Origin: Macrostomum lignano
Taxonomy: Eukaryota
Reading direction: 5' to 3'
Assembly (NCBI GenBank): GCA_002269645.1
Contig: NIVC01003693.1
Span: 18,524-82,523 of the forward strand
DNA: 64,000 nt
Each line of letters begins with the position of its first letter. Position 1 is the first letter of the stretch. Both the position numbers and the translations under genes were made by a program. Below the pieces are notes generated by a model. The model had not been told where the DNA came from and made no database searches. It saw nothing but the letters and a program-made list of their open reading frames with translations. Shown piece by piece: positions 1 through 39,193 of the stretch.

Positions 1-2845
1 GCAAGCCCTCTTTGAAAATGCGCTCGCGAGAAAGGCAGTTGTTGACACGAACGCGGGCTCGGCGGTCGCTGATGAAGCTGTTCGTCCAGCGGAGTGCGCA
101 GGGTGTAATGCATTTCAGGCTGAGCTTGTAGATGTTACCCTTCCTCCAGACCTTGTCATAGGCTCGGGACATGTCATAGACCCCCAGGGCGCTGCGCTGG
201 GGTGGTAGCTCTTCAAGGCCGTCGAAAATGTCTTGCGTGATGCGCGCAATCTGTTCTTCACACGACCGACCGCTGCGGAAACCGGCCTGGACGTTGCTGA
301 GGCGGCCGCGCTTTTCAAGGTGGTGCCTGAGGCGCTTCTGTACCAGTCTTTCGGCGACCTTGGCGATGCAGCTGGTGAGGGCGATGGGCCTGAAGCTGCT
401 CGGGTCGGAGGCCGGTTTGCCGCGCTTGGGTATTGGGATGATAATGGCCCGTTTCCACTGGTGCGGGCAGCAACCGGAGAGCCACGACTTGTTGATGAGG
501 TCGAGGAGGCGGCTTTCAGTGCACGGCGGGAGGTGTTTCAGCATCTCGTTGCTGACACCATCTGCGCCGGGGCTTTTCCCAGATTTGAGCGCGCGCAGAG
601 CACTCTGCAGTTCGCTGCCGCTGAACGGGCTGCAAAGGCCGGATTTCTGATTGCCAGGGCAGCAGATCTGTTTCATCGCCTTGTGGGCGAGCCGGGCAAT
701 GGGGCGGTCCTCCTTGCGTCGGTGATTGCGAGAAACTTCGGCGTAGATGTTGCAGAAGAGATTGGCTTTTTCGCTCGGAGTGGTAGCCGTTCGCTGGCGT
801 GATCCAGGTTTGGCAGAGGTGCTCAGGGCCGCGTTGGCGGGGGGAGGCGGCGGCTCTCCTCGGAGCGAGCGGGCGAGGGCAAAGAGGTCGCTGTTTAGGT
901 TGAGTTCGCCGATCTTTTGTTGCCAGTGCTGTTGTTTGGCGGAGTTGATGGTGTCGGCCGCGGTCTTGCGGGCGCGGTGGAAGGCGTTGATGTCGTGTTC
1001 GGACTTGCTCTGCTCAGCGGTGCGTCGCGCACGGTTGCGTTCGTCGCAGGCGTGTTGGCAGGCGTCCGTCCAGAACGGCTTGCAAGGCCGGTTCCGAGCG
1101 CCACGGGGGATGTTCGCCGAGGCGGCTTCCAGGATGGCCCTGCAGAGGCGGTCGTGGTCGGCGTCGCAGGTGGACCGGTTGCTGAGTTTGAGACGCTTGT
1201 CGGCCACGGTCAGGTGTTCTTGGAACTGGGCCCAGTCGGCCTTCTTGTAGCTCCACTTTGCGGCGCCTCGTCGACGCTCGCTGGGGCCCGGACGGTCAAT
1301 GCTGAACAGGATCGGAAGGTGGTCGCTGCCGATGTCGCCAAGGGTGGTCCAGCTGGCGCTGGCGATGGCCGCGATGTTACCGGTGCACCAGGTGAGGTCC
1401 GGGGTAGAGCGTCCACCGGTGGCCGGGTTGGTGCGCGTGTGGTCTTCGGTGCTGTTGCAAAGGTGGAGGCCTTTTTGTTGTGCCCACTCTTCTATGCTTG
1501 CGCCACGATCGTCTTCCGGTTGGTGGATGTCCCACCCGCCGTGGCCGTTAAAGTCGCCAGCGATGACGGTACTGCTAAGAGTGGGGAGGCTGTACCAGTC
1601 GGGAAACCAAGCTTCATCGGGCCTCTGGCAGCTGTTTGGTGGCGCGTAGACGCTGACGAGGGTGACGGGTCTACGGCCTGGCGGGCAGATGGTGATGGCG
1701 GCTGCATCGAGGGGCTCCGGGCAGTGGCAGGTGACTTGGTGAAACGGCAGGTCGTCGCGGACAAGGATCAGGCAGCCGCCTCGGCCGGTAGGGCGGGAAA
1801 TGTTCTTTTTTTGGTTTTTTTGATAACGCCTTCGCGTCCGGTGGCTGTCTCCTGATCAGTGGTGATGCTGGAAGCCTGTTGCGTCGCGGGGCGCTGTTGT
1901 TGTGGTCTCTGGCAGCACGGGCCTCTGAAATTGGTTCTGTACTCCTTGGTGCTTTTAAGGGCAGCGCATTGAAGATGGAGCCATGAGTGACAGGCACTGC
2001 ATTGGACGCAGGCACGGCTTCTTGGGATATTCCGGTTGCAGATTGGGCAGATCCAGCGTCCGGTGGCTGTCGGAGCGAGATGGTCTCTGGGCGTGGGATC
2101 GGCTCCGCCGGAGTTGTTGGACTCGGCCGGGCTGGTGTCCACCGATGCTGCGTGAGGGCGGGCGTCCAGGGGGGAGTCGCGGTTGCTGCATGCTATGCGT
2201 CCGCTGCGGCAGCCTGGGCACCAGGATGCGCGTTCCAGCGGCCAGCGTAGACGGCAGCGGGGCCGTTGGACGGTGCGCGACGTTCCCCGCGCTTGGATGG
2301 TCGGTGGGCGGGGCTGCGGGTCAGGGGCTGCGGTCAGCTCCGTGGTGTCCGCGGCGATGTCCGTTTTGCAGACCCCGTCTTTTCGTGCCGCGACGCAGGA
2401 TCCAGGGGGCGGGATGAAGTTGGCCCCTGGGAGGAGCTTCGTCTCCTGGAGGAGGGCAGCGCAGGGGCGCAGGCGGTTAAGACGGTTGACCAGCTCCGTG
2501 CGGCGAGCCTGCAACCCATTGCAGTTGAGTTGCAGGACGTGGAGCTCTTGGCCTCGCTTAGCGCTGCGCGTGTGCTGCCTTCTGCTGCGATGGCCGGGGG
2601 CTGACGATCCGCCCCGGAGGCGGCGGATGGAAAAGATGTCCGGTTGATCGGCACTGGGTTTTTCGGCCTGATGGTAATCGGCGTAGCATCCCTGTTGGTT
2701 GCGACACTTCGTCGCCTCCGTGGGGTGGTGGTTGGAGGCGTTCGGGGGCCCCGCGTGAAGGGGGTCGCATGCCATGGGTTGGTGTTGGCCAACCCACTCC
2801 GCGCTGTCTGGCGACTCGTTCAGAGAGTAGCCGTTAGTGCGAACC

Positions 2846-2846
<1 letters not shown>
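1..2846 (-). mobile_element. Non-LTR retrotransposon (Ingi/I-group-like), 5' part: AP endonuclease with inserted PHD finger plus N-terminal RT; 3' part runs off the window
   Basis: Minus-strand translation shows APE motifs LQLNCNGL, LLQETKL, RKD, GRGGCLILV, VSVYAPP, IAGDFNGH, STPDLTW, SDHLPI, and RT motifs KSPGADG, FRPIALTS, QAGFR, YDMSRAYDKVW, SFISDRRARVRV..FKEGL. The frame from about 1790 to position 2 is consistent. One -1 shift falls in the A/T runs near 1805-1822. Confidence 0.95.
2700..2846 (-). ncRNA. Putative HDV-like self-cleaving ribozyme at the LINE 5' end (P1 imperfect)
   Basis: On the minus strand: P2 UGCGAC/GUCGCA, P3 CCC/GGG, L3 UUCACGC, P1.1 UC/GA, P4 CGCCUCC/GGAGGCG, J4/2 CGAA. 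A good 5' P1 strand is not found. Confidence 0.55.

Positions 2847-2847
<1 letters not shown>

Positions 2848-2901
<54 letters not shown>
2848..2901. repeat. (CTG/CAG)18 microsatellite at the junction of the LINE and the P-element remnant
   Basis: Direct reading; gives 18 Q in ORF 1768..3402. Confidence 0.98.
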
Positions 2902-2902
<1 letters not shown>

Positions 2903-3750
2903 ACGGTCAGGAATGCCTTGAGCAGCGAGTCCTTCCGTCTAATCTCTTCAAAGATTTTCCAGCAATGCATTGAAAGTGCGAAAGCTAGTTCTGTTGGCTG
3001 GCACAGACCTCCTCGGTTGATCTGATCAAAGAATGATGATGCTTCAGCCGGAACCCAATCAAGATCCAACGATGGCACCTCTTCCTGTTCAAGTAGTAGC
3101 TGTCTGCAGGAGTCGCACTTTCGGTTCTGCACTAACTTACGAGCAACTGCGGGGTGACATAGAAGATTGCAGTCGGGTCTTCTGGCCCGAGGATGGCTGT
3201 CCATCTCCAGCTGCACAGCCAGAATGCTAACAGATTCCCGAATAGAGCCAGAGTCGGAGGGCACCTCGATGACACCATGTCGATTTTCTTCAAGGAAAAG
3301 TCCGATTACTTCAGCAGGCTTACGACAGCAATTTTTCTGCTGTTTTCCTTCACCTGTCGCGCGGAAATGAAGAAATTTGCCCCGGACATTTGCCGAAGCC
3401 AACCGAATCGGCTCTCAATGCAGTCGGACTGAATCGCTCCAAGAAGCACATAGGAGAAGCCTTCATGGTGCAGCAAATGCCTTGCACAGCAGGCCAGGGC
3501 ACGGAACGTCATGCGGCAGGCAAAGAAGGTCTCCTTGGACATGCCAGGATTGCCTGACTCCTCCCAGCTGTCAAGAAAGTCAGCGAACTCCTCCAGAAAT
3601 TGCAGCTTCCAGTCAAGCGATGAACGAACAGGATCCTGACTGATGCCCCGCTTGCATTTTCTCTTGTACGGCGACTTGACATTGAGGACATGCCAGAGCT
3701 TCAGCACCAAGGCGAAGGCTTCCTTGCGCTGAGAGCTTCAAAGCTGTCAC
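2902..3750 (-). mobile_element. P-element/THAP9-like transposase, C-terminal remnant, frameshifted and interrupted by the LINE
   Basis: QSDCIESRFGWLRQMSGANF matches the P-transposase QDxxExxFGxxRQxxG motif. It is followed by VARKLVQNRKCDSC and QINRGGLCQPTELAF, typical of the P-element C-terminal region. Confidence 0.8.
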
Positions 3751-4419
3751 AGATGGAGAAGGTCGTGACCCGGGTCATCGATGAGATCTAAATCGCAAGT
3801 AGGATTGAATCGGTGCCACCATTCACGGACGAAGCAACAGGAGTCAGGACAGCCTGTGTTTCCTGCTATTCGATCCGTCAATGCAGAATTGCATCCGTCA
3901 ACTTAAAAACATCAAAAACTTTCACAGCCGAGGAGTCTTCCATCTCCCTCCCTCCACGGCTCTTGTACTCGTAACTGTAATGATTCTTAAACTAGTTTGT
4001 TCAGAGCCTGGCCCTAAATCAATTTTTTTTCTCTATTAGTGCCATATATTCTCATCATAAAGCCGAAATAATTATGCTAGTAGCACAAATGTCTCCAAAA
4101 TAATCGCTTTTGTATGCTGTTGGAGTGCAAGACTTTCGTAATAGCTCTCTGAGAGATAAAATGCCCCTTGTTAATCACACAGCAGCTGGGAATGGCTGCC
4201 ACACTAAGGTACGAGTAAATGCGTGTGGGGAGCTTCCAGTCGAGTGATGCTATTTTAAGAGTCCCTGCCTATCCCCAGTGCCGCAACTTCAACTCAAGAG
4301 AACTAGTTTATTTAGCTTAGTAAACACCACTTGCCGCCTTGCCACACTAGCGTAAAATGGGGGGAGAGTGTTTTATTCTAGCTTCCAGTCCAGTAGTGCT
4401 AGCTATAGAAGTCCCTGGC

Positions 4420-6110
4420 TCATGTCATTCCGATCCAATTTTCTATCGATTGATCATCGGCTTTGACTCTATCGATTCTGAGTTAGTCGTCACTCCTAGT
4501 GATTCACTCCTAATGATGTACAAAATTTATGTGAGAAGAAGCGTTGGGTACAGACTTGTGACTGAGTCCCAATATTGGACAGAGCAGAAGGCTGTGTGCG
4601 ACTCAGACTGAGATCTGTCGATGATGGCTGATCTGATTGATGAGGCAAAGAGGCAGCACATTTGAACCTTGGGCAAGTGACTATCCGCAGGTGGGAGGCG
4701 AGCAAGCACCATAGGCAGCAAGGATCCTGCAGGAGGCTGGCACTGGCTGCCGCTGTTGATCCGAGTTTGTGTCAGAGCACAGCCAAATAATAATGGCGGA
4801 GTTCAGTCAAAAATAATTTAACGCAAAAACAACGATGAGTTTTTTCAGATGCAGCCATCTTTCGGACTATATTTGATTTGACTCAAATTTTTCATGAGGT
4901 GGTATTACTTTAATTACAGCAGCTTATTTGTTTAGAATTATTCTGAGAAATACAGCAAGTACTCATCAAGTACTCGTATTAAAATCCGTGTGTGCAATCC
5001 ACGGCATGTGCGACTCCATTATCTCCGCTATCCATGTCTATCCATCTCGTTGGTTTGTCTAGCAGAGTTACGCTACTAATTATCACCGCTCATTAACACT
5101 GGGGGAATAGACGAGGCGCACAGGCAAAGTGGATTACATTTTTATTCACAGGGAAGTTGCCTTGATAAGTAATTTCTATTAAGATTTTTTCACGAAGATT
5201 TCTCTGTTTAATTAAGTTCTTTTTAAGATATTTAAGTGTTCTAGGTAAAATTACTTCACTCTAGTGAGAGTCTCCAGCATGATCATCAGTACACCTTGAC
5301 GTACTTCTTCCAGTTGGGGTCCAGCTCGATCGCGTCACCAACACTGGCGTCAGTGAAGTCCAGCATCCGGCACCTGCCTTGCACAGCATTGTGCAGAGCA
5401 GCCCTGCACTGCCAGCGGCGTGAGCAGAGGGACAGACAGTCAAACTTCTTGTAAACAGCCGCGACCTCAGTGAAGCAGTAGTCAGGACTGATGTCGCCGA
5501 GCTTCAGAAACTCAGTGACCTTAAGGTAGGAGCTGTTCGGCGTTGTGATTGGCTGGCAGACTGTGCCATGAAGTTTCAGCATGCCGTCACCGAGTCCAGT
5601 GTTGATTATCAAGCCGAAGTCGTCATTGGCAGCGGAATTTCTGGGAGAAGGCCCATTCCAATCCGAATCTTCGGACTGAAGAAGCGAGCCATTCGTGAGG
5701 CGCCAGCCAGTGCGGGATGTCTGCCGCTCGCGCGTCAAGTCCGAGAATCCAACCCAGGACCAGGTGGAGATTTGCGATCGCACGGCTCGCATCACCCCAA
5801 GATCCAGCAGCAGTTCGCCACCGATTTGCAAGCAGCGCTCAGCTGCATCGCACCACAGTCTCTTCGGGGAGTATTCGATGAAGAGGCAGTGGCCGTTTGT
5901 GATGGTGAAAGGCAGCTGACAGGCGGATGCTGCAGTCAGCAGCAGAAGCTGCACCTGCAACAGCGATCGCAGCTGCATGATGTTGCTTTCATTGGCAGTG
6001 AAGCAGATGTGACAAATGGGCAATGTTCTGCCATGTGTGAGTTCAGTCTGACGAAATTTAAATGTCATTGCTTTTTCTCCTGGCAACCAATCAGAAGTGA
6101 GGAAATAAAG
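4420..6110. repeat. Copy A of a duplicated block (lectin gene plus its 3' flank); copy B is about 12835-13593 joined to 18007-18815
   Basis: Collinear similarity, e.g. 4526-4990 vs 13012-13450, 5260-5293 vs 13555-13593, and the lectin CDS. Confidence 0.9.
5286..5978 (-). CDS. Secreted C-type lectin-like domain + PAN/apple domain protein (copy 1)
   Basis: Signal peptide MQLRSLLQVQLLLLTAASA; CTLD motifs CxxPF..GHCL, WCDAAERCLQIGGEL, WVGFSD, W; C-terminal PAN-like CLSLCSRRWQCRA..CRML. The upstream in-frame ATG at 6086 is probably not used. Confidence 0.8.
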   Translation of the reverse strand: MQLRSLLQVQLLLLTAASACQLPFTITNGHCLFIEYSPKRLWCDAAERCLQIGGELLLDLGVMRAVRSQISTWSWVGFSDLTRERQTSRTGWRLTNGSLLQSEDSDWNGPSPRNSAANDDFGLIINTGLGDGMLKLHGTVCQPITTPNSSYLKVTEFLKLGDISPDYCFTEVAAVYKKFDCLSLCSRRWQCRAALHNAVQGRCRMLDFTDASVGDAIELDPNWKKYVKVY

Positions 6111-6199
6111 ACTTTCGTGTGAGGCATTTGAGGTGCGTTTGAGGGGTAGCTGAAGCAGCTCGTAGTGAGGAAGCAGCTTCTGGAGTGCGTCGTCCTGCT

Positions 6200-6545
6200 C
6201 CTTCTGCCATCAGAACTTTTTCCTCCGAGCCCACCTTGTGGTGAGTGGTTCCAGGCAGTCCGAAAAGTTTGAGATCAGCCTTCGCTGCATATTATTAGGC
6301 CATTTAGATACTCCAAATCTGTCAGTGTTGCAGGGTTTTCCATCTTCTGTAGTACTCTTGACTTCCTCAGGATCTGCATGGTTGAAACATTACGTCCTCC
6401 AGTACGAATCCAAGTTGGTTGTTGGCAAACCGGTGCTCTTGGGCTGGTTGATCTTCAGGCCATTTTGGTTCAGGCACTCTTCTCTATCATTAAGCTGCTC
6501 TTCAATTTCTCCCAAATCAGGATATCATCAGCATACTAATGTGCA
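6200..6545 (-). mobile_element. Degraded Ty3/Gypsy reverse transcriptase fragment
   Basis: Frameshifted minus-strand remnants: DDILIW, GLKINQPK, LGFVL, DPEEVK, ISNFSD..EPL. Confidence 0.55.
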
Positions 6546-9079
6546 GCTGCGCACTCCTGCCTATAGTCATCTCGGTCTCTCTCAGATTCAGTCGTTCGTT
6601 TAGACTAATGCAAACGATTCAGATACATATTTCAGCGCGATACGCGCAGACGTCACTTTTATTTCAAACAAACAAATATACTCGAGTACTGAAACAAATA
6701 TTTATAATTTCCTCCGGCTTCCTCCGGCGCGAGCCGTGTCGGTCACTGACCGTAGGTTTAACGTTTGCTTTTAGTCCACGCAAAGCCGAAGTGCTTCACC
6801 TGCCATTCTCACTTGGTAAGAATAGTGGGAATAGCACAGGCGTGATGACTGTCTTTTCCAGCGAACTTGTCGATATCTGTTTCATGAAGCTTTTATAAAA
6901 CGATTGAAAATATTCACTTGTCAGGGTAGGGCTTGACAATTTTCACTCGTAACTTGTTGTTGATTTGTCACAACTTTCATAAAACGCATTCGGAATTGTC
7001 GGAACGTTGTCGGAATTTGCATTTGTCACTTGTAATTTGTCTGAAAAGTGGCTTCATGAAATCCGTCCCTAGTATAGTGTGTTGGGCTGCGCCCTTCCAG
7101 TGTGTATGTACTCGTACTTTTGTTTTCAGTTTTCATGCCACCCCGCCCCGTCCCCCGTCTCGCGCCCGGGCCAGGGTTTGTGAGAGGCGTAAGTCTCAAC
7201 CCTGGCCTAGCCCTTTGCACCCAGCCCCCGGCCCAATCTCTGTCCAATCTGGGTGCCCCCCCCCCTCCCTCGTTGCCCGCCTCACCCTGGGGCTGCTCGT
7301 ATTGGCTGGCTGGCTGATAAGCCGGCTGGGCCCCAGGGTTTGGCTCGCCGTCTCCATTCTGCCCCACCCCTCCCCCTTTTTTTGTGTATTATTTAAATGC
7401 TAGCCCTGAGCGGGCTGCGCTCCACGTTTGCTCTCTATTGGTGTCCGCTTCGTTCTTACTGTTTTTGCGTTCATCGGCGTACCTCTGCCTTCGCGTGCCA
7501 ATAACTGCTTCGGGCCAATAAACGCTTCGTTAGTAACTCGATATATCAAGAGGAGGTGAGCTCGAGCTTTCGTTCTTCTGGGTTGCCGCGTGGGGCCGGG
7601 ATCTGCAGGGACCTGGGAACGGTGAACTCTCGCCGATCCCAGGGTGTTCGGTCAGGCGAACTCTCGCCGAACCGAGCGAGACAGGGTAGGAATAGCCGGG
7701 GTGAGGGCTGGGACAGGGGTGTCTCAGGCGGGGAGGGCCCGAACCTTGACCCGTCCAGCGGCCATTAGGCCGAGACACAACAAGTGCAAAAGTGCGATTT
7801 GAGTGAACTACATGAACAGGCAATTGTTACAATTTTCTATGAAATCTCACAGAAGAGGAGAACTGCGAAATGTCTCGAATTGATGACCCTCAGAGTAGCC
7901 TGTCAGCCCCAGACAGCTTGACTGCAAGTGTGAGCAACCAATTTTCTTCCAGAACCGGCGCGCGGTCGGATATTTTTGACAACGCACTGTTCAACTGGCA
8001 CTGTACAGGTATCATTTTGTCACCAGCGATGAACTGGAGCGTAACTGTGATGGCATCAAGTATCAGCTCCGCCTTGGATATCGCCCTAATCGTGAAGACG
8101 TTGTTGTCCAGTTCTCTCGCTTGGTGCGAAGATCTCTCCAAGAATTTTTCGGTGACTTACATATACTGTCTGGTTACCGGCTGTTGATTAAAACGTAGAT
8201 GTTGCAGAAATAATTTGCTTTGCCACATCTTTTGTTTGCACATCTTTCCGGCCGCTGGACATGTTGACTTTCCATGGACCCTCTACACAGTTTGCAGATG
8301 GTGGCTGCTTCGCTCCGATGGCTGCATCTTTTTTGGTGTCTTGGAAGCGACTTGTACATACCAACCTTCATCACGATCGCATTTCCGGTCTTGGAGTGCT
8401 CTTTATTATTTCTGTTGTAGCCAACCTTGAATGAGCCTCCGCCTCTGCAGCCGCCTCTTTGAAACTGAGCGTTTGATATTCCTTCACGAACAGCTTCCCA
8501 AGAATATGGTGATCTGCAAGGCCTCATATGACTAGATCTCTCAGTCTCGCATCAGTGTTACCAAAGTTGGCATTCTCTGACGATCCGACATTCTCTGAAC
8601 AGACGTTCTGCAAACTGCCTGACTGATTCTCTTAGATTTTGGATGCATTGTTGGAAGGAGTATCCTCCGTCGAAACGAACTTAATCAGAATTAGGATCTT
8701 ATTAAGAGCAGCTGTTAGGTCGTCGTACGACTTGTTACTCAACTTTTCTGGAGCTAGGTGATCAACCAATGAGTCGTAAAAGGTTGGTACCACGCGCATT
8801 TTTAGCATTTGTGCTCTCGCCGTTGCTTCCCACCTGAAAAATTTGCCACAACGTCAAATCTATCAATACACTGGTCATTCAGCTTCTCCAGGTCCACTGA
8901 GCCTGAACCTGGACGTTTAGGTTGCAGTATCACACAGCTGCCAAGTTCTATCATTGTGCTAGAGGGGGGGGCGAAGTTGCCAAATTGGTGCAGGGCTACA
9001 ATGTCAAGGTGGGCATTGATGGGGTCGAATTGAGCAGATGCTTGGGATAACCTGTTGGGGATCTGGCGCAAGGCCACAG

Positions 9080-9195
9080 GGGGATCGGGATCACACTACT
9101 GAGGATTGGGATCACACTACTGGGGGATAAGGACCACACTACTGGCACTGGGGGATAAGGATCACACTATACTGGGGGATAAGGATCACACTACT
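9080..9195. repeat. About 21-bp tandem repeat (GGGGATAAGGATCACACTACT), about 5 copies
   Basis: Direct reading. Confidence 0.85.
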
Positions 9196-11531
9196 GTTGT
9201 TGGAGGCGGAGTGTCAGATGCTGTCAGAATGAGTCGGGCTGGGCCCGTCCTGTACTACTCAAAGCCAAAGGGAGTAGCAGCATTGACAACTTGGCTGTTA
9301 AATTTTCTAAAGAGTTTTTTTAATAATTGACGTATTGGCTGTTTTATCGCTGCTAGAACTGCGTGTCGCTAGATTTAACAAAGTCCGAAAAACATTATAG
9401 GTCTTACATAGGTTTTTTTACTAAGTCACTGTGTGATGCTGTGTATAATTTTTTTAATTAAAATTTATTTGGAGAGTCAGTGTTCCAGTTTCTTTATTGA
9501 TCAAAGCAAGCAGCTGTACACATTCACAGCTGACCGAAGCGCATACACCGGTGCGTGCGCAGCTGGCACGCTCTCACGCAGGGTGTACATAGGCCTTGAC
9601 TTTCTCTCGGGTGTTTAGGACTATTCATGTTTTTTTAAACACAATGTTAGTCGTCCAGATTATATATTATTTGGATGCTTATACCACGCATACATTGCGG
9701 CCAGTAAGTTCATTCCAATGTTGCAACTCGCATCTCGATGTGTTCGGCTTCATCTCTCAGTGCAGCTTCTCCGAAGTCCTACGGCGTCGTCGGAATAGCG
9801 GCCCGTGGAATGCCTCCATTTCTCTTAGGCTCTTTTGTGAGCCTGGAGTGAAATGGGTGTTAGCCATCCACCCCTCGCGCTGTACATTGTGCCGCCTTTG
9901 TGCTCCGTCCTCTCTACCCCCCGTGGGGTGGGGGAGGGGTTTGCTCACCCGCTTATTTATTTGCGCGCCGCCCTCTGTGCCCCGTCGCTCGCTTTGGCTT
10001 TGCAGCTCAAAATTTTTTTAAGCACGTTCTTTTTTCTTTTAATCTCGTTTGCTTGCAAAATAAACTTATCGTTACTACGGGGTCGCTTTCCCCACCTCTC
10101 GCGCTGCTTCGGGCCATAAGCCTTTGCCTGCCTGCTGTTCGTCTCTTTCGCTGTTGGGGTGTGATTGGTTAATGGTTGGGGTTGAGAGAGGTGACAGTTC
10201 AAATGGGTCATTTACTACCTGTATTTTAAAGGGCATAGAAATTAACATTTAGAAACAAACACCAAAAACAGCTCGTTTATGTACATTTTCTAGCTGCCCG
10301 CGATCCTGGTTAAAAGAATCCAGGCACTTACTGTGGTACTCTACGAGCATCAAATTTCCATTTGAAACTTATGTACTTTTTTGGTTTTATTGTTCTATTT
10401 CATTAAAAGTGAATTCTTCTTCGTCCGCGGCGTCCTCGACCTACAGTTAGTGCATTCTTTTTCGTCAGTGCGGGGTTTGGGACGCTTGTAACTATGGGGT
10501 TGGCTAGGGGGGTTGGCGGGCGTGGCAGGGTCTGGCCGGCGGCCGGGCTTTGCGCGTGCCCCTCCCCAGCCGTGCCCCCCCCCTGCCCCGGGCTCAGGGC
10601 TGGTTGGCTGCGGCTGGGCCGGCTTTTGCGCGGATGGGGCCCCGCCCACACCAGGCGGGGTTTTGATTGGCTGGCCGGTGCGGCCAGTCTCTATTTTCTC
10701 TTGTTTGCTCTACTTTTGTGGGCTTAGCCGGTGGGGCCGCCTGCCCCCGGCTCCCAGGCCTGTGCTTGGTATTTATTATTTTGCGCACTGGCTTTTCTTG
10801 CTCGCGTGGCTCTGGGTTTTCCCACTCACTTCGTTTTTGCGCTCCGAGAAATTGTAAGCGATACTTTACTCAAGTCAAGTAAATGGTTAACCTCAGTAAC
10901 TCGCAGGTTAGAGCGTCAGAACGCCTGTCAGCAGTAATATCATATTGGCAGAGTGTCAGAACGCCTGCTGGTACAACCGTAAAGTACTTGGGCTGGGCAC
11001 CCGAACCGACCCGGGACAATAGTGCATTCAATTTCATGCTACGATAGTGAAGTATTCTTCGTCGTCCACTTGAAGAGTCACCCAGCAGCAGAAACTAAAA
11101 GGGTTTTGCAGCGGGAGATACTTCAGTTGCAGTTTCGAACAAAAAGGCATGGTGGATGACTGCAGTTGCAGCAACTTGCTTTCCACATTGCGTGCTGTTC
11201 TGAGTGACAGCACAGAAAGTTGCGGAGTTAGTGAGGCAGTGTTTCTGCCCTCTCGAAAACCATCTCTATGATGCGCTCCTCATGCTTTTTGCTACAAATT
11301 GTTTTGATAGCGTTGAAAAGAGTTTTCTAGCTGCTGCCTCATGCATTACTTCAGAAATTTCAGCTGCAGCATCAGTCAATGCATGCAATAACATTGCTGC
11401 TGCCTGTTGTTGTTGTATGCGGTGAGCCGCTCAGAGGGGACACCAATCGATGACGCTATTGTGGTGCGTTATCTTATTGGCGGATACATTTCAAGATGAC
11501 CGTTTAGGTCCAAATTGCTGTTGTTGTTGCT

Positions 11532-12730
11532 TTCTTTTCTTCACTCCGACCTCCGACCGCCCGCAGGCGGCCGGGGCGGGGCCGGGTGGCCGCCAGGGTC
11601 GTCAATGGGCGGCTCGGTCCGACCCACCCTCTTGAGGTAGTCACAGATGAGGGCGCCGCCACCCTCGAGAACGTCGTTCCAGGAAATGACCACCCCGCCC
11701 CAGGTGCGGATGCGGGCCTGGTGGTGGCAGGGGCAGTAGAGCATAAGATGATCGACCGAGTCCGGTTCTCCGCAGTCGGCGCATCGGTCGTTCTGAGCGA
11801 GGCCGAACCGAAACAGGGTGTCGCGAGTCAGGGGGGATTTCTTAGTGCGGATTTGGCTGACCGTCACCTGGCCCCACCTGGGAAGGTCATCGTGGCCTGG
11901 CGTCGGAGTCAGGTGCGGATGCGTGCGGTCCCGCGCAGTTCTCCAATTGGACAGTACGTGGCGGACGGCATTTTTGGCGGAGGCCTGGGAAAGTTGCGCG
12001 GTGTTCGGTTCCAATTCTGCAGCTTCGCGGGCGAGGGCGTCCGCCGCCTCGTTACCAGCAATGTCCGCGTGGCCAGGAACCCATTGGAAGTGGAGCCTGG
12101 TCTGAGCTGGGAGGTCGGTGATGAGTCGCCAGATCGTGAGGACGAGCGAATTAGTAGAACGGTACGGGCCTTGGTTGATGGCCTGAAGGCCTGATCGTGA
12201 GTCGGTACAGATGTGAACCGAGAGCCGCGGGTTGCCGATGGTGTCGAGGGTTTGACGTAGGGCTCTTATCGCTGCCTCGATGGCGACCAATTCAGCGTGG
12301 GTGCTACTGCACCACTTTCCGGCTTGCTGGCGGATGGACATGCGGAGTGCCTCGATGGATTCGGCAGTGAGGAGAGCACCTCCGCCGGCAGCAGTGCCGT
12401 CCGGGCTAACGGAGCCGTCCGTCCAGATGGTGCAGTCGGCGCTCGGTAACAGGGCCAAGGTGGCTTCTGCCGCAGCACGGCGGGCCTCCAGTGGGTCGGA
12501 TCTTTTGGTCGGCCGGGCGAGATCGGTAGCGATGGTGATCGCCTGGTCGGCTAAGTGCCACGGCGGGAGAGCCGGGTAGTGCTGGCGGTCTATGTCTCCG
12601 ATGTGGATACCGGCAAGGCTCAGGAGCCACAGGCCTACTCGTCTGAAGCATGGCCGGTGACTCAAGACGATGTCTTCATCGTGGAGGTCCGTGTCGACGG
12701 GCCGGTCCGCTGGGCCTTCACGCTCCCAAG
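11532..12730 (-). mobile_element. 5'-truncated Ingi/I-group LINE (RNase H + C-terminal zinc knuckle) with a 13-bp TSD
   Basis: ORF 11541..12665 has WTDGS, HAELVAI, TDSRSGL, WVPGHADIAGNEAAD and CADC..HLMLYC. The 3' tail is 9 nt (AGAAAAGAA). TGTTGTTGTTGCT is identical at 11519-11531 and 12731-12743. Confidence 0.95.
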
Positions 12731-13593
12731 TGTTGTTGTTGCTGCTGCTGCTGCTTCAAATTTCCCTCCACTCCCGACAGTGAATGCCACAGCAGCGCTT
12801 GCAGCAGCTTCCATTATCTTTTTAGTCATTGGCTCTGCTCAAGGTCATTCCTATCCAATTTTCTATCGATTGGATAATGGCTTTGACTGCATCGACTCCT
12901 AGTGATGTCACTTCTATGATTGACTGTGCAGCAGTGTGCTCAGTCACTTTGTGTGCAACCATGCAATGCAGTAAATGTGAGGGAATGCGCCTGCACCAAC
13001 ACTGTACAAAATCTATGTGAAGAAGCGATAGGTACAGAGTTGTGAGTGAGTCGAAAACTTAGACAGATCAGAAGGCTGTGTGCGACCCAGACTGAGGCCT
13101 GTCGATGATGGCTGCAGTGACTGATGAGGCAGAGGCAGCACATTCGAATCTTGGACAAGTGACTATCTGCAGGTAGGAGGCGAGCAAGCACCAGGCAGCA
13201 AGGATTCTGCAGGAGGCTGGGACTGGCTGACGTTGTGGATTCGTGTTTTGTGTCATAAAAGACAGCCAAATAGTTATGGCGGTGGTGAGTCAACAATAAT
13301 TTAACAGAAAAACAACAACAGTGAGTTTTTGATGCAGCCATCTTTCGTGCTCTATTTGAATTGACTCGAATTCATTTCTCGAGAAGGTAAAACGCTTAAT
13401 CACAGCAGCTTATTCGTTTAGGATACTCATCAAATACTATTTTAATATAAAGAAATTGCCTTGATAAAATTACTTTTTATTAAACTTCTCACGGATATTT
13501 CTGTTTAATTAGGTTCCTTGTCAGATTTGTTAGTTTTCTTTGTTAAAGTAATTCACTCAAGTGGGAGTCTCCAGCAAGATCATCAGTACACCT

Positions 13594-13809
13594 TGTTGTA
13601 TACCGATCCGAATCCAATGTACTTTTATTTTCAGTCGTTGCCCCAGCGTTAATTTATTTGTCTGTGTCCCAAACAGCTACCGACTGACTCTGACTCTATA
13701 AAGGCTTGCCGTTACTTATATCGTTAAATAAAATATACATTCAACTTAAGCTACGCTCTCGTTATAACAGCTTTCGGCTCAGCACAGAGTCAAAGCACAA
13801 AACACAACA
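13594..13809 (+). repeat. 5' LTR
   Basis: Direct repeat of 17791-18006. Confidence 0.97.
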
Positions 13810-16800
13810 ATGGCGTCGCAGTCACTTGGCGAACTGCCGCTGGAGAAGCCCGATCGAGCTCAAACCTGGATGACTGCCTTCCAAGCGCTGGCCCGAGCAA
13901 AGGGCTGGACTGATAGTGATGGAAAGAAGACCATCGCAGACAACTTTTTGGCGCACTGCGGGCTCACAGCCTTGGAGAAGATACAAAGCATAATCGCCCC
14001 CAAATCCGTGACCGACCTGACTTTTGATGAAATCAACACTGCCGTGCAAGCGTACCTAAAGCAAAAGGAAAAGCTGGTCATCGCTGAACGCGTTCGTTTC
14101 TTCGCCATGCGGCAAGCACCAAATGAATCAATTTCTGACTTCGTTAGTCGACTTCGTCGTGCCGCTAAGGACTGTAAGTTTGATGATTTGAAGACATCCA
14201 CCAGTCCTCTCGAGGAACTGCTCCAAATGGCGCTAATTTCTGGGCTCAGCAATGTAAACCAACAACAACGCGTTCTGGAAGCCACTCAAATCAAATCATT
14301 CAAGTCGGTTCCCGAAATTGTCGACTTTATTCGCGACCTAGAGCAGGTGACAGCTTTTGTGTCCATAAAATCAAGCGACTTTCAAGCGACTTTGACTCAG
14401 CCAGCTCCTTCAATCCAAACACACGAAGCCTCTGTGCATTACTCGCAGCGACATAATGGACATCGGAGTGTCAAGGACTGTCGTTGCTGCGGCAAAGCAC
14501 ATTCGGAAGGAAAATGCCCGGCTTTTGGCAAGCTCTGTTCAAAATGTGGTAAGAAAAATCACTTCGCCAGTGTATGTCGCTCATCATCTGCACGGCCTGT
14601 GCACCAAGTCACTGACCCATCAGCTCATGAAATAGACAATGAGCCACATGAGAAGACTTCTCTGATGCATCTCAGCGACGTGGGCACCGTCCACGCTGTC
14701 AACGTGGCCACCGAGCCACTTATTATCGATGGCAAGACCGTCGACATGCAGATCGATACAGGCGCCTCCGTCTCCGTGCTCTCCAGTTCGCAATGGGAAC
14801 GACTGGGTCGACCCTCGCTGCAGAAGTGTTTTCGGCGGCTAGAAGCCTTTGATGGTCACGTGATGAAATCACTCGGAAAGCTGGCAACCACGGTTGAACT
14901 ACGAGGTCATCTGCACCCTGCAGAGCTCATTGTGGTCAACTCGAGCAAACCATATGGCTTACTTGGTCGCGATCTGTTGGACGCGGAGGACCTCTTTCAC
15001 ACCACAAGTGTGCCCCAGAACAACACCCGCGTAGTTGAGCCACTGCCTACCATAAAAGGCGTGAAAGCTCGCATGGAGGTTGTTGACGGTGCCAGACCCA
15101 GATTCTGCCGTGCTCGATCCGTGCCTATTGCAATTGAGGGGCAGATTAACGCCGAACTCGACCGCTTGCAACAGCTAGGAATAATTGAACCCATCGAGGG
15201 ACCCGTGAGCAATGCGTCGCCCGTGGTGTGGGTGAAAAAGAAAGATGGCACCTTGCGCATGTGTGCCGATTACAGTGTACACGTGAATGAGAAAATAAAG
15301 TCCGACTCTCATCCGATCCCCAATGTAGAAATTCTTTTCTCACGCTTGAAAAACGCAAAAGTCTTCGCCACCGTCGACCTCCGCTCGGCCTACTGGCAAA
15401 TTGAACTGGATGAAGCGGCCAGAGATCTTTCTATCATCAACACGTCGCGTGGACTGTACCGAGTAAACAGATTGCAAATGGGGATGAAAAACGCCTCGTT
15501 CATCTTCCAGAGAACTATGGAATCGATTTTGTCAGACATCAAAGGACTGCTGATTTATCAAGACGACATCCTGGTGCACGCACCAGATGCGGCTACTCTA
15601 GAAAAGCGCCTTGCCGCGGTGCGCACCCGACTACAAGAAAAGCGCGTCACCATCAACGAGTCAAAGTGCATCAGCTACACCGATTCCATCTCTTTTCTTG
15701 GATTCAAGATCTCTGCCGCCGGAATCCAGCCAGACGATCGGCTTGTTGAAAAAGTCAGACAAGTTTCTGCACCGACTAACAAATCTGAGCTCGCGAGCTT
15801 TCTGGGACTAGTCAACTTCTTTGGGAGACTGATTCCGAACTTCGCTCGAAAGACCGCTCCTCTTAACCATCTGCGAAAATCCAACGTCAACTTTGGTTGG
15901 ACCGACGAGTGCTCTCGAGCTTTTAATAACCTCAAAGCCGAAATCGCCTCTGCGCCAATAGTGCAGCCCTATAGCCTATCAAAGGAGCTGACTCTAACAA
16001 CGGATGCCTCAAAGAGCTCAATAGCTGCTGTAGTGACTCAGGAAGGGCATCCCGTAATATTTGTATCAAGGACGCTGTCATCCGCCGAATCAAATTATTC
16101 AAATATTGAGCGCGAGGCCCTCGCCATCTTCTGGGCCGTCGCTCGACTGAAGCACTTCCTTCATGGCCGTCACTTCACAATCAAGACAGATCATCAGCCA
16201 CTGACTCGCCTTTTCCGCGGTGGCATCCCTCTGAACACATCGGCGAGAATCGGGCGCTGGGCTATGCATCTCATGCAGTTTGACTTCAACATCGAGTACG
16301 TGCGAGGCCGCGACATTCCACACGCTGACGCTTTATCTCGGCTCCGCTTTGATCACCCTTCAGCAGACGACAAGGAAACGTTTGATGCTATCAACGTCGT
16401 GGTATTTGAATCGCCGGTGATCGAGGCCGGAAGAATTTTGGCAGAAATGGACGCAGACCCGTTCACCCAGAAGATTTTAATGAGAGTACGCAATGGAAAT
16501 TGGCAAGGTTGCTCGCAGGCAGAGTCAAGCTTCAAAGCCGTTTCCGAAAAGCTAACGCTGGAAAACGGACTTCTTTACATGCAGAGGAGGGTTTACATCC
16601 CCCACGGTTGCGCCGGGCTGCCTTTGACGCGATCCATGACACCCACTCTGGAATTCAGGCCTCATACAACCTGCTTTCAGCGTCTTGCTGGTGGCCTGGG
16701 ATGCAACAGGATGTGTCACGATTTGTCCAACGCTGCCCGGTCTGCAGCCGCCTACGACCGCGTGTCGGCCACGACAGGGATCGATGGCCCGCCCCGGACT

Positions 16801-17627
16801 ATCCATTCCAACGCATTCACATGGACTGGGCGCATGTAAGAGGAGCTGGCGACATACTGATTATCGTTGACGCTCATTCTGGCTGGATAGAAGCGTTTCC
16901 CTGCCAAAACAGAGTGGCCAGCACTGTCCAGCGGTGCCTCTGCGCCATCTTTGCACGCTTTGGTATGCCGGAGCTGGTTGTGTCAGACAACGCACCCGAA
17001 TTTGTGGCCGATAGCCTCAACGCATGGCTGCGCGCACATGGAGTGAAGAAAATGGAGTCACCCGCCTACTATCCTCAGGCAAACGGCCTCGCAGAAAGGG
17101 CAGTGCAGACCGTTAAATCAGCGCTGCGTGCATGGTCGGAAAGAATAACTCACATGGATTTCCCATTCTACCTGCAAAAAGTGCTCATGCACCATCGCAA
17201 CTCCTCAAGAAGCCGCGGCCAGTGCCCAGCCGAGTTGGTGCTTGGTAGACGCCTTCGTGTACCGGTCGTCTCACAGTTCGAGCAAGGAGACAACGTCATC
17301 TACCAGCCGCAGAAATCAACTCAGGGAAGCCAGGCTACATTTCTAATGACTGCTGGACACAATACGGCATGGATTTTAGAAGATGAGAGCCTGAAGCTGG
17401 CCAGCACCAATCAGTTGGCCCCACGAATGCCACAGCAGGACGCCCTTACAGCGGACGAAGAGGAAGCGAATGACAATCTGCCTGTGCAACAGCCCCCGAT
17501 GCAAATGGCGGCCGGAGAAGAGCAGGCACCAACGACCCATGAGCAGGATGCCCCAGAGCAACCGAATGACAACCCGATGCGCCGAAGCTCGCGAAATCGT
17601 CGGGCCCCTGATCGATTCGTGCCGTAA
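13810..17627 (+). CDS. Gag-Pol polyprotein (Gag zinc knuckles, protease, RT, RNase H, integrase); one frameshift near 16600
   Basis: CxxC..H..C knuckles, IDTGAS, YQDD, TDAS, then integrase HDTH..WWPGM..CPVC, MDW, SDNAPEF, NGLAERAVQTVK in the shifted frame. The shift falls in a C5 run (16599-16603). Confidence 0.95.
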
Positions 17628-17790: not shown

Positions 17791-18006
17791 TGTTGTATAC
17801 CGATCCGAATCCAATGTACTTTTATTTTCAGTCGTTGCCCCAGCGTTAATTTATTTGTCTGTGTCCCAAACAGCTACCGACTGACTCTGACTCTATAAAG
17901 GCTTGCCGTTACTTATATCGTTAAATAAAATATACATTCAACTTAAGCTACGCTCTCGTTATAACAGCTTTCGGCTCAGCACAGAGTCAAAGCACAAAAC
18001 ACAACA
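17791..18006 (+). repeat. 3' LTR
   Basis: Direct repeat of 13594-13809, preceded by the PPT. Confidence 0.97.
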
Positions 18007-18693
18007 CACATTGACGTACTTCTTCCAGTTGGGGTCCAGCTCGATCGCGTCACCAACACTGGCGTCAGTGAAGTCCAGCATCCGGAACCTGCCTTGCACA
18101 GCATTGTGGAGAGCAGCTCTGCACTGCCAGCGACGTGAACAGAGGGACAGACAGTCAAACTTCTTGTAAACAGCCGCGACCTCAGTGAAGCAGTAGTCAG
18201 GACTGATGTCACCGAGCTTCAGAAACTCAGTGACCTTAAGGTAGGAGCTGTTCGGTGTTGTGATTGGCTGGCAGACTGTGCCATGAAGTTTCAGCATACC
18301 GTCACCGAGTCCAGTGTTGATTATCAAGCCGAAGTCGTCATTGGCAGCGGAATTTCTGGGAGAAGGCTCATTCCAATCCGAATCTTCGGACTGAAGAAGC
18401 GAGCCATTCGTGAGGCGCCAGCCAGTGCGGGATGTCTGCCTCTCGCGCGTCAAGTCCGAGAATCCAACCCAGGACCAGGCGGAGATTTGCGATCGCACGG
18501 CTCGCATCACCCCAAGATCCAGCAGCAGTTCGCCACCGATTTGCAAGCAGCGCTCAGCTGCATCGCACCACAGTCTCTTCGGGGAGTATTCGATGAAGAG
18601 GCAGTGGCCGTTTGTGATGGTGAAAGGCAGCTGACAGGCGGATGCTGCAGTGAGCATCAGAAACTGCAGCTGCAACAGCGATTGAAGCTGCAT
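17959..18693 (-). CDS. C-type lectin + PAN/apple protein (copy 2), with an LTR-derived C-terminus
   Basis: Near-identical to 5286..5978. Copy 1 ends KKYVKVY; copy 2 reads KKYVNV then CCVLCFDSVLSRKLL from the antisense LTR. Confidence 0.8.
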   Translation of the reverse strand: MQLQSLLQLQFLMLTAASACQLPFTITNGHCLFIEYSPKRLWCDAAERCLQIGGELLLDLGVMRAVRSQISAWSWVGFSDLTRERQTSRTGWRLTNGSLLQSEDSDWNEPSPRNSAANDDFGLIINTGLGDGMLKLHGTVCQPITTPNSSYLKVTEFLKLGDISPDYCFTEVAAVYKKFDCLSLCSRRWQCRAALHNAVQGRFRMLDFTDASVGDAIELDPNWKKYVNVCCVLCFDSVLSRKLL

Positions 18694-18911
18694 GATGTTG
18701 CTTTCATTGGCAGTGATGCAGATGTGACAGATGGCAATTTCTTGCCATGTGTGAGTTCAGTCTGACGAAATTTAAATGGCATTGCTTTTTCTCCTGGCAA
18801 CCAATCAGAAGTACTCATGCGCAATACGTTTCCTTGGGATTCATTTATACGAACGAGTATCCTCTCACTCTAATGGGGTGCTGGGGTTAAACTTTGGTTT
18901 TCACGTTGTTT

Positions 18912-22689: not shown

Positions 22690-23555
22690 TGAAATGGATC
22701 AATCTGTTAAGTTATTTTTGCAAAATTTTGCCGATACAAAAGTTTTACACCTTACCCATGGTCTTTGTCCAAAGTCTTGAAGTCAGAGACATCGAAATTC
22801 TTTTAATTTTTGCAACCTTTTAGGCAATGTTCTTTAGTTCTTAATCTCGAACTTGTGCGCATTTGATGCGGCAAGTTGTCCTAAAGCCAGGAAACCTGAA
22901 AAGCTTGCGGGTCGGTTTTAATATTGGAGCAGTTCGAAAATTTATTCAGAAATTTGTTTTAACCGTGTTTGCGCTCAGAGTTGCTTCACTACCCTTGCAG
23001 CTTAGCTGCGATTTGTCCGGCCGGAAGCTTTCAGCTTGCAACTTGCCAGGTTGATTTCCCAGCAAACAGTTACCACTGAAACTGGGCATGAGGCGGCCAA
23101 TTCCGTTGTCTTAACGTCAATAGACATTGCAGACTATTTATTCACTGGATACGAGCTATAGACACTGTCAGTCGCTTACTTCAACAGTGAAAAGGCGAGG
23201 GAATCTCAATTTTTTTCTAACGTAATTTGTGGATTAACTATTAGCAATGGAACTTCTTCTCATTTTAAGCCCCGCTAGCGGGTACTGAGGCACATTTCTG
23301 ATGCAACTGACACAGAGAGCTAAGCGAAATTACGTTGAGCCATGCGGCAGCTTCAGATGAGAATCGGAAATTTCTCGTGAGACACCCCACAGCACACGAG
23401 TTTGGTAAATCCCCGGGCATTTTATGACTGGTTTGCCTAGCCGGCTTGCACGGCGTGGGCTAGCCGGCGTCTGCGATTGGCTGGGAGGGGGTTGATTGAC
23501 TCCACCCCTGGGGGTGGGTGTGTGGCGTTGGGGTGGGTGGCGCTGTGCCTTTTTA

Positions 23556-29949: not shown

Positions 29950-29972
29950 CCAGACATTGCATTTAATACAGT

Positions 29973-36138: not shown

Positions 36139-36199
36139 CTGCGGCGGTTTGGGGCAGGTGGGAGCTCAGCTTATTTACTTTGTTCAACTGTGAGTGGCT

Positions 36200-36653: not shown

Positions 36654-37095
36654 CTGAAAGTACACCACAACATTAGCTTTGGTAATATTGTTGCGAAGGA
36701 GCTGCACCGCGGGCTCCCACAGCACCTGCACCTGGTACTCCTTGATCAGCGCGAGGACAGGCACAGCCAGCTCAGGGCTGATGTAGTTGCTAATAGGCCG
36801 GCAAAAGTGCAAATTGTGCAGGCAGTTCAGCAGAGCCCGCATCGGCGCCTGATCCTTGCCCGGCAGTTTCACCACGGCCTGGTCGCTTTCAATGAACCGG
36901 TTGGAGAACATGGCCTCCAGCACGGGCGAGTGCAGCGACAGCACCCAGGTGTTGCTGTACAGGGTGGAGTCGTCATCGAGTGCGAAGGCCACATTTCTGC
37001 AAGGGATTGCGTGCGTGGCAGGGTCTGTTGAGTCCGGAGGGGTGGAGGGGGCGTCGGGCTGCCCGTTGGATTCTGCGGTTGCTTTGGCCAGCTGC

Positions 37096-37127
<32 letters not shown>

Positions 37128-37343
37128 CTGCTTGGCTTTCTTCGAGTCTTTGCTCAGCTTGATGGGCAGCGAGGGTGTCTTCAGCCAGGCTGACGGAGAG
37201 AACAGCATCGGGTCCGGCCGGGGCTGCAGTTGGCGGGAGAGACAGCTCGGGCGATTTGCGATGGAATCTCGAAGCCGATTATTTACATTCATGGTGCGGC
37301 TTTGAGAGCGAACATTCTGAACGCTACTATAAGTAGCAGTCAT
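36654..37343 (-). CDS. BTB/POZ-domain protein, exon 1
   Basis: NVAFALDDDSTLYSNTWVLSLHSPVLEAMFSNRFIES..VKLPGKD..LLNCLH is a BTB fold; polyQ in the N-terminus; donor CAG|GTGAG at 36654. Confidence 0.85.
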
Positions 37344-39170: not shown

Positions 39171-39193
39171 GGGGATCGTGACTATCTGACTAC

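What the first reader, a model, noticed from the sequence alone, without database searches (positions are those of the whole stretch)
1..12743. Ingi-like LINE family that appears to target (CAG/CAA)n microsatellites
Seen: two independent minus-strand LINE pieces both abut CAG/CAA repeats in the same orientation. Copy 1 (1-2846) begins directly after (CAG)18. Copy 2 (11532-12730) is flanked by a perfect 13-bp TSD, TGTTGTTGTTGCT, and the reconstructed empty site is a CAG/CAA microsatellite. Known: microsatellite-specific LINEs exist in other clades (e.g. R1-clade Waldo/Mino, Tx1-clade Koshi, R4-clade Dong). Inferred: both pieces belong to one APE-PHD-RT-RNaseH-Zn family with trinucleotide-repeat specificity, which I do not recognise in the Ingi group. 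Such a family could land in polyQ coding tracts; the BTB gene polyQ near 37090-37130 is an empty candidate site.
Basis: partly seen in the sequence, partly recalled or inferred. Interest (0 to 1): 0.8.

Follow-up and report, generated by a model that had tools for sequence, protein, structure and literature searches.

The report
LINE that lands in CAG/CAA repeats
Two young pieces of one retrotransposon (LINE) family sit in CAG/CAA (polyglutamine-type) repeats, and a related element in the flatworm Macrostomum lignano has landed next to such a tract inside a gene. This points to a LINE lineage that prefers such tracts, but three insertions cannot show how strict the preference is.

Summary
Copy 1 (1-2846, minus strand) starts directly after (CAG)18.7. 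Copy 2 (11532-12730, minus strand) has a perfect 13-bp target-site duplication (TSD), and its empty site is (CAG)4(CAA)3CAGCAA.

CAG/CAA tracts of four or more units cover only 0.24% of the window. No further copies from the source genome could be reached.

An unselected search with the N-terminus of copy 1 found its closest relative in Macrostomum lignano (58% amino-acid identity). That full-length element is inserted, in frame and in the same orientation, in the last Q-rich stretch of a zinc-finger gene. A paralogue preserves the empty site.

The barnacle relatives complicate the picture:
- The closer family has (GAA)n tails and ordinary, non-repeat targets.
- A more distant family carries (CAA)n as its own tail.

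So the tail alternative had to be tested. It fails for copy 2.

Best reading (confidence about 0.6): a flatworm sub-lineage of RNase H-bearing, Ingi-like LINEs makes its first nick inside CTG/TTG runs. How strict this is remains unknown.

The lineage also has an endonuclease split by a Cys-rich and PHD insertion, and an RLRGG motif where relatives carry a 2A peptide.

I rate it a new variant of a known kind, with moderately high interest.

The parts
1..2846 (-). LINE copy 1: near-full-length 5' part (leader, split APE, first half of RT), cut by the window edge. One frameshift in an A7CCA7 run at about 1805-1825.
   Evidence: 58% amino-acid identity to the M. lignano element L013. GC 63.3% against 49% in the flank.
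2847..2902 (-). (CAG)18.7 tract directly upstream of the 5' end of copy 1. It is in frame with an upstream open reading frame that runs to 3402.
2608..2628 (-). IRRLRGG motif in the leader, at the position where relatives carry a 2A (NPGP) peptide
2401..2544 (-). APE N-terminal segment (LNCNG...LQETK...PPPG)
1781..2400 (-). About 208-residue insertion inside the APE fold. It holds the Cys motif CRLRWP..WCPGCRSGRIAC (2188-2256) and a PHD-like finger (1912-2055).
   Evidence: Conserved in M. lignano P0303.
1289..1780 (-). APE C-terminal segment (GGCLILVRDD...GSDHLPI)
   Evidence: Pfam Exo_endo_phos_2 E=6e-16. Foldseek best match is the TRAS1 endonuclease.
2..631 (-). Reverse transcriptase, N-terminal part
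   Evidence: Pfam RVT_1 E=1e-12
11532..12730 (-). LINE copy 2: 5'-truncated 3' part with an open frame. RNase H at about 12018-12437, CCHC-type zf-RVT at about 11721-11843, stop codon at 11541-11543, purine tail AGAAAAGAA at 11532-11540.
   Evidence: 42-46% identity to barnacle family 1.
11519..11531 (-). 3' target-site duplication (AGCAACAACAACA on the minus strand). Its first AG is shared with the tail as microhomology.
12731..12743 (-). 5' target-site duplication
12744..12755 (-). Rest of the target tract, (CAG)4, upstream of the TSD
37091..37132 (-). Unoccupied polyQ-coding CAG/CAA tract in a BTB gene (candidate empty site only)

Best explanation
Both pieces belong to a young, single-ORF, APE-type LINE that carries RNase H (I/Ingi-like group), from a Macrostomum-like flatworm genome.

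The element integrates by target-primed reverse transcription. Its endonuclease makes the first (bottom-strand) nick inside a CTG/TTG run; at copy 2 the nick is 5'-TTGCT^GCTGC-3'. The freed 3' end pairs by 2 nt (AG) with the short purine (GAA-type) tail of the RNA and primes cDNA synthesis. A second nick 13 bp downstream produces the 13-bp TSD.

Because every unit of a CAG/CAA tract offers a nick site, insertions concentrate in or at the edge of such tracts, in one orientation (LINE sense = CAG sense). The 5' junction falls about 13-14 bp downstream of the first nick. It can therefore lie inside the repeat (copies 1 and 2) or just beyond it (M. lignano).

Shown: the junctions, the TSD, the tail, the orientation, the empty site in M. 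lignano and the domain architecture.

Inferred: that the preference comes from the endonuclease, possibly helped by the Cys-rich/PHD module inserted in it, and that the preference is strong enough to be called a specificity.
For: - Junctions and TSD.
- Rarity of CAG/CAA tracts (0.24% of the window).
- Independent test. The single best N-terminal relative among 1.84 billion representative proteins is M. lignano PAA56246.1. Its locus L013 shows a full-length element (58% amino-acid identity) whose 5' end follows ...CATCAGCAGCAGCAACAACAGCAGTCGCTAATG. It lies in frame inside a Q-rich C2H2 gene, in the same orientation.
- The paralogue PAA93933.1 is 94% identical up to ...QQQQQQSLM and then continues QQRSPHECPQCGRGY. 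This is the empty site.
- With a 13-14 bp TSD, the first nick of that insertion would again fall in CAGC^AGCAG.
- The tail is not CAG/CAA. Copy 2 ends TGA-AGAAAAGAA. The nearest barnacle relatives end in (GAA)4-6, with TSDs AGAACAAAGACACC, GAACACACCTTTGA and AGGAACGGA. These start like the AGCAAC of copy 2.
- Same-family indicators.
- Both copies have open frames, so they are recent.
Against: - Only three insertions, and no genome-wide sample.
- Copy 1 lacks its 3' junction, and the M. lignano element lacks its 3' half (break at L013 4852). The first-nick position is therefore seen directly only once.
- Barnacle family 1, at 42-46% identity, inserts at non-repeat sites. Any specificity is a recent sub-lineage trait.
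- The M. lignano junction is 9 bp outside the perfect repeat.
- The M. lignano case entered the protein database because it is fused to a gene model, which enriches for coding (Q-rich) contexts.
- The window was flagged post hoc.
Confidence: 0.6

Rival explanations
1. Coincidence. This is an ordinary, non-specific LINE. Three insertions happen to lie in or next to CAG/CAA tracts in genomes rich in polyQ-coding repeats, and they were noticed because the pattern is eye-catching.
For: The closest barnacle relatives insert at ordinary sites. The flagging was post hoc. The M. lignano case was found through a gene model. That host gene has five separate Q-runs, so any insertion in it is close to one.
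Against: Tract density is only 0.24%. Two of two in-window junctions are exact, with 0 bp distance. All three share one orientation. The M. lignano hit was not selected for polyQ.
Confidence: 0.13
2. The CAG/CAA repeat belongs to the element. It is either its own microsatellite tail, which then seeds or attracts further copies, or a 5'-transduced piece carried from a master copy. In this reading the repeat is not a recognised target.
For: A related barnacle family (31-34% identity) clearly carries (AAC/CAA)5-7 as its own 3' tail, followed by non-repeat TSDs. A further fragment ends ...GGAGAGGGAG(CAA)5CAG. The tract at copy 1 is seen only on the 5' side.
Against: Copy 2 is 5'-truncated, yet it has (CAG)4(CAA)3 on its 5' side, outside and inside the TSD. 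It has its own purine tail, like its nearest relatives. In M. lignano the Q-tract and the following SLM codons are present in the empty paralogue, so they are host DNA. No LINE remnant lies upstream of either tract.
Confidence: 0.08
3. Chromatin-directed or transcription-directed insertion. The PHD finger steers the element to active, H3K4-methylated genes. Q-rich exons are hit as by-products, and short AG/GAA microhomology decides the exact site.
For: The PHD finger is most similar to H3K4me3-reading fingers (PHF23, PHF13, TAF3, BPTF) and is conserved in the M. lignano relative. Two full-length copies lie in frame in open reading frames. The TSD starts share A-G-(N)-A-A-C with non-specific relatives.
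Against: This does not explain base-exact adjacency to the repeats or the constant orientation. The PHD matches are marginal (E about 1e-3). The tract at copy 2 is not demonstrably coding.
Confidence: 0.1
4. Endonuclease-independent capture. Unstable CAG/CTG repeats form hairpins and breaks, and LINE cDNA is used to patch them.
For: CAG/CTG tracts are known fragile, structure-forming DNA (general knowledge). (CAG)18 is long.
Against: Copy 2 has a clean 13-bp TSD and a tail-to-target junction, typical of endonuclease-dependent target-primed reverse transcription. The endonuclease keeps all invariant catalytic residues. The tracts at copy 2 and in M. lignano are short and imperfect.
Confidence: 0.04

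Closest known systems
Microsatellite-specific LINEs: Waldo (ACAY)n and Mino (AC)n, Kibi (TC)n and Koshi (TTC)n, Dong (TAA)n, Togen (TG)n. Repeat targets are as listed in PMC3812793 and PMC4640811.
   Same: Insertion into a simple repeat in a fixed orientation. APE-type target-primed reverse transcription (for Waldo, Mino, Kibi and Koshi). The repeat is present on both sides of the element (copy 2).
   Different: The repeat is CAG/CAA, which is on neither list. The element carries RNase H (I/Ingi-like). The targets include polyQ-coding exons rather than 'safe' non-coding repeats. Only three insertions have been seen, one of them 9 bp outside the repeat, so strict specificity is unproven.
Ingi / L1Tc clade (trypanosomes; also reported in a mollusc), PMC3708506
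   Same: A single long ORF without a visible ORF1. APE-RT-RNase H-C-terminal zinc finger. A peptide-separating signal immediately upstream of the APE in relatives (2A GDIERNPGP in L004; NPGP in about 48 of 150 relatives).
   Different: The window's sub-lineage has RLRGG instead of NPGP. The APE is split by a Cys/PHD insertion. The tail is a short GAA-type purine run, not poly(A). RT phylogeny was not done.
Barnacle (Amphibalanus amphitrite) LINE families 1 and 2, uncharacterised, auto-named 'transposon BS' / 'R1' / 'Ribonuclease H'
   Same: Family 1: 42-46% identity, a Cys-motif insertion in the APE, a (GAA)n tail, and 9-14 bp TSDs that start (A)G(N)AAC. Family 2: same domain order.
   Different: Family 1 targets are ordinary sequence. 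Family 2 carries (CAA)n as its own tail. Neither shows a CAG/CAA target.
Human L1 (TT^AAAA nick preference)
   Same: This is a comparison of how it works. A short nick-site preference plus tail-target pairing enriches insertions in matching simple repeats without strict specificity.
   Different: Different clade, motif and tail.

Membership tests
APE-type non-LTR retrotransposon (LINE) | APE endonuclease and reverse transcriptase in one ORF | tested here: met
   Pfam Exo_endo_phos_2 6e-16 and RVT_1 1e-12. The AF2 core folds as APE and Foldseek finds the TRAS1 and L1 endonucleases.
APE-type non-LTR retrotransposon (LINE) | Marks of target-primed reverse transcription: TSD, 5' truncation, 3' tail | tested here: met
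   13-bp TSD, a 5'-truncated copy 2 and a purine tail.
Ingi clade | RT groups with Ingi/L1Tc in an RT phylogeny (RTclass1) | not testable with these tools
   No labelled reference RT set was available. The supplement of PMC3708506 is not held.
Ingi clade | RNase H domain and C-terminal zinc finger after the RT | tested here: met
   RNase_H 4.9e-16. zf-RVT 4.9e-4, which is below Pfam's cut-off, but the CCHC pattern is present.
Ingi clade | Single ORF with an N-terminal 2A peptide and no ORF1 | tested here: inconclusive
   Only about 300 bp precede the APE and no ORF1 is seen. There is no NPGP in the window; IRRLRGG stands in its place. 2A is present in relatives.
Ingi clade | Poly(A) tail | tested here: not met
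   The tail is AGAAAAGAA. Relatives have (GAA)n.
Sequence-specific (microsatellite-targeting) LINE | The great majority of copies lie in the same repeat, in the same orientation | tested here: inconclusive
   3 of 3 known insertions of the sub-lineage. No genome-wide sample could be obtained.
Sequence-specific (microsatellite-targeting) LINE | Target repeat on both flanks, and an empty site that is the repeat | tested here: met
   Met for copy 2. The empty paralogue in M. lignano has Q6-SLM-QQ at the site. The 3' flank of copy 1 lies outside the window.
Sequence-specific (microsatellite-targeting) LINE | Constant nick position within the repeat unit | tested here: inconclusive
   Seen once (GCT^GCT at copy 2). 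It is consistent with the M. lignano insertion only if that TSD is 14 bp.

The most novel reading that the evidence does not exclude
This would be a LINE lineage specialised on polyglutamine-coding CAG/CAA tracts. It enters them in the sense orientation and in frame, is co-transcribed and co-translated with the host gene, and frees its own protein at the conserved RLRGG site. That site replaces the 2A peptide of its relatives, and the ORF is open from the first nucleotide of the element. A zinc/PHD module built into the endonuclease would provide target or chromatin recognition.
Probability: 0.15. Interest if true: 0.85.

Novelty: new variant of a known kind. Interest (0 to 1): 0.62.

Why it matters
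Known microsatellite-specific LINEs use non-coding di-, tri- or tetranucleotide repeats (AC, TC, TG, TTC, TAA, ACAY) as safe havens. A LINE that prefers CAG/CAA would be the first to aim at the repeat class that encodes polyglutamine, so its insertions would hit coding exons directly. The M. lignano case shows a zinc-finger gene truncated and fused to the element.

It would also offer:
- a natural endonuclease with trinucleotide-repeat preference;
- an example of a split endonuclease carrying a PHD/zinc module;
- a possible switch from 2A to an RLRGG-type separation signal.

All three can be tested with standard genome-wide junction counts and in vitro nicking assays.

Tried and rejected
(1) Finding more copies from the same genome. 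All routes failed:
- the protein search with copy 2 and with copy 1;
- exact look-ups of window ORFs;
- the metagenome scan;
- the viral-contig scan;
- self-BLAST of the window.

The best relatives are 42-58% identical, from other species.

(2) One event copied by a segmental duplication. Rejected: homology between the flanks starts at 4424/12844, and the pieces are in the wrong order.

(3) The CAA/CAG repeat as the element's own tail. I took this seriously after finding (CAA)n-tailed barnacle LINEs. It is rejected for copy 2 and for the M. lignano insertion. It cannot be excluded for copy 1.

(4) An older LINE 3' remnant upstream of either tract, which would mean insertion into an old tail. 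No protein similarity was found.

(5) My guess that the ORF upstream of (CAG)18 is a P-element/THAP9-like transposase. Pfam and PDB give no support, so I dropped it.

(6) A ubiquitin-like domain ending in RLRGG. Pfam finds no ubiquitin domain. Only the motif is conserved.

(7) TSDs for L003, L004 and L005. None could be defined.

(8) The 3' junction of the M. lignano element. The element is broken at L013 4852 and the downstream host exon is not in the locus.

(9) RT-based clade assignment. No reference set was available.
Full report
**1. What is in the sequence**

Copy 1 occupies window 1-2846 on the minus strand. Reading 5' to 3', it encodes the following:
- a leader of about 300 bp that is open from its first base; it holds an in-frame ATG at 2775 and the motif IRRLRGG (2608-2628);
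- the N-terminal segment of an AP-type endonuclease, APE (2401-2544);
- a stretch of about 208 residues with a Cys motif (2188-2256) and a PHD-like finger (1912-2055);
- the rest of the APE (1289-1780);
- the first half of a reverse transcriptase, RT, cut by the window edge.

The only defect is one frameshift in an A7CCA7 run at about 1805-1825. This could be an assembly error.

The 5' end of copy 1 abuts a perfect (CAG)18.7 tract at 2847-2902. An upstream ORF of lower GC content runs in frame through the repeat into the element.

Copy 2 occupies 11532-12730 on the minus strand. It is an open 395-codon C-terminus with RNase H (E=5e-16) and a zf-RVT zinc finger. It ends with the stop codon TGA followed by the tail AGAAAAGAA. 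It is flanked by the perfect 13-bp repeat AGCAACAACAACA. The empty site is GAAG(CAG)4(CAA)3CAGCAATTTGG. The bottom-strand nick is therefore 5'-TTGCT^GCTGC-3'.

**2. Is it more than chance?**

Tracts of at least 4 CAG/CAA units cover 0.24% of the window. Two random junctions in such tracts have a probability of about 6e-6. This estimate is post hoc.

The window's other mobile elements have no such flank. These are a Ty3/Gypsy element at 13810-17627 and an unrelated LINE at 28429-33337.

The two pieces are not duplicates of one event.

**3. One family?**

The pieces do not overlap, so identity cannot be shown directly. Three indirect lines agree:
- GC is 63.3% and 64.1%, and GC3 is 0.76 and 0.73. 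The other LINE has 55.7% and 0.64.
- Both pieces are most similar to the same barnacle element, L001 4230-7920 (42% and 46% identity).
- Both are less similar to three other reference elements (34/31%, 38/29% and 36/31%).

**4. Relatives, and the tail question**

No copy from the source genome could be reached.

Barnacle 'family 1' (Amphibalanus amphitrite) is 42-46% identical. It ends in (GAA)4-6 and has ordinary TSDs: AGAACAAAGACACC, GAACACACCTTTGA and AGGAACGGA.

Barnacle 'family 2' is 31-34% identical. It ends in (AAC)5-7, followed by non-repeat TSDs: ACCCCGCCGGCGA, ATGACCGGGAAG and ACTACACGTAC.

So CAA repeats can be LINE tails in this group. It fails for copy 2, for three reasons:
- The repeat also lies 5' of a truncated copy.
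- It is part of the TSD.
- The element has its own GAA-type tail.

**5. An independent test**

I ran a full HMMER scan of 1.84 billion representative proteins with the N-terminus and APE of copy 1. It gave one strong match to the leader, P0158. This is Macrostomum lignano PAA56246.1.

Its locus is L013 (GCA_002269645.1 NIVC01002647.1). It holds a full-length 5' end of an element 58% identical in APE and RT and homologous in the leader.

The element starts right after ...CATCAGCAGCAGCAACAACAGCAGTCGCTAATG. It lies in frame inside a Q-rich C2H2 zinc-finger exon, with CAG on the sense strand of the LINE.

The paralogue PAA93933.1 is 94% identical up to ...QQQQQQSLM. It then continues QQRSPHECPQCGRGY, the next zinc finger. 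This is an empty site.

The 5' junction is 9 bp past the repeat. That is what target-primed reverse transcription predicts if the first nick is in the CAG run and the TSD is 13-14 bp. The 3' half of this element is missing, so this remains a prediction.

**6. Mechanism**

See the Best explanation section. The first nick in CTG/TTG runs and the AG microhomology to the purine tail are read from copy 2.

The role of the endonuclease insertion is inferred. Alignment A3 places the insertion between the invariant residues G49 and G258 of the APE. AlphaFold2 folds the two APE halves confidently, with pLDDT about 90 for the N part. The insertion stays flexible, with two small structured islands. Foldseek's best match is the endonuclease of the telomere-repeat-specific LINE TRAS1.

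From recalled knowledge of APE1-DNA structures, the equivalent hairpin contacts the minor groove. I did not test this here.

The PHD finger resembles H3K4me3 readers only marginally. However, it is conserved in the M. lignano relative, and it is homologous to the PHD that other relatives carry between the 2A peptide and the APE.

**7. Comparison with what is known**

The lists of microsatellite-specific LINEs in PMC3812793 and PMC4640811 contain ACAY, AC, TC, TTC, TAA and TG targets. Neither contains CAG/CAA.

The features that fit an Ingi-like element (PMC3708506) are a single ORF, RNase H, a C-terminal zinc finger, and a 2A peptide just before the APE in relatives. The purine tail and the missing NPGP do not fit. 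No RT phylogeny could be done.

**8. Verdict**

I rate it a new variant of a known kind, with interest 0.62.

Noticed in passing
window 2608-2628; P0158, P0303, P0048; L004 about 2010-2040: The window-type sub-lineage conserves [IVM]xRLRGG (identical to the ubiquitin/ISG15 C-terminal tail) exactly where a barnacle relative has LVRLRAGDIERNPGP. About 48 of 150 relatives have NPGP (2A) there. This may be a replacement of ribosome skipping by a diglycine cleavage signal. Pfam detects no ubiquitin fold.
   Followed up: partly
window 1781-2400; L004 2290-3000; P0156, P0159, P0161, P0168: The APE endonuclease is split by an insertion carrying the motif C-x(6-9)-W-C-x-G-C-x(3-4)-C. There is one copy in the window, P0048 and P0303, and two in barnacle L004. 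In the flatworm elements a PHD finger also sits inside the APE, whereas other relatives have 2A-PHD-APE.
   Followed up: partly
L001 10440-10500; L006/L007 6795-6820; L008/L009 6466-6485; L010 7085-7105; L004 1470-1492: A barnacle LINE family has a regular (AAC/CAA)5-7 3' tail followed by 11-13 bp TSDs. It is therefore a source of CAA microsatellites in that genome.
   Followed up: yes
window 4424-6098 versus 12844-13595 + 18006-18812; 13810-17627: A segmental duplication (80-97% identity) contains a PAN-domain ORF. In the second copy it is interrupted by a Ty3/Gypsy-type LTR retrotransposon (protease, RT, RNase H, integrase).
   Followed up: partly
window 28429-33337 (+): A second, unrelated LINE has ORF1 plus APE, RT and RNase H (about 30% identity to copy 1). 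It has no CAG/CAA flank and serves as an internal control.
   Followed up: partly
window 23555-24208, 34519-35518, 38689-39171, 40440-42064, 55286-56646, 57274-58271, 59043-59557, 60302-60910, 62586-63370: The density of minisatellites (16-62 bp units, up to 74 copies) is unusually high. The GGTCATTC-type unit at 59043-59557 resembles the GTCATAGGGTCATTGGGTAT array upstream of the M. lignano locus (L013 600-1000). This hints at a macrostomid flatworm source.
   Followed up: no
window 52113-55016 (-), 42017-44878 (-), 36171-37343 (-): Host genes appear as long uninterrupted ORFs: an ionotropic glutamate receptor (967 aa), a SET/AWS methyltransferase (953 aa) and a BTB protein with polyQ.
   Followed up: partly
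window 2903-3710 (-): ORFs of lower GC content lie upstream of (CAG)18, in frame with the repeat and with copy 1. They have no Pfam or PDB match. Their identity is unknown, so it is not known whether the repeat is coding.
   Followed up: partly
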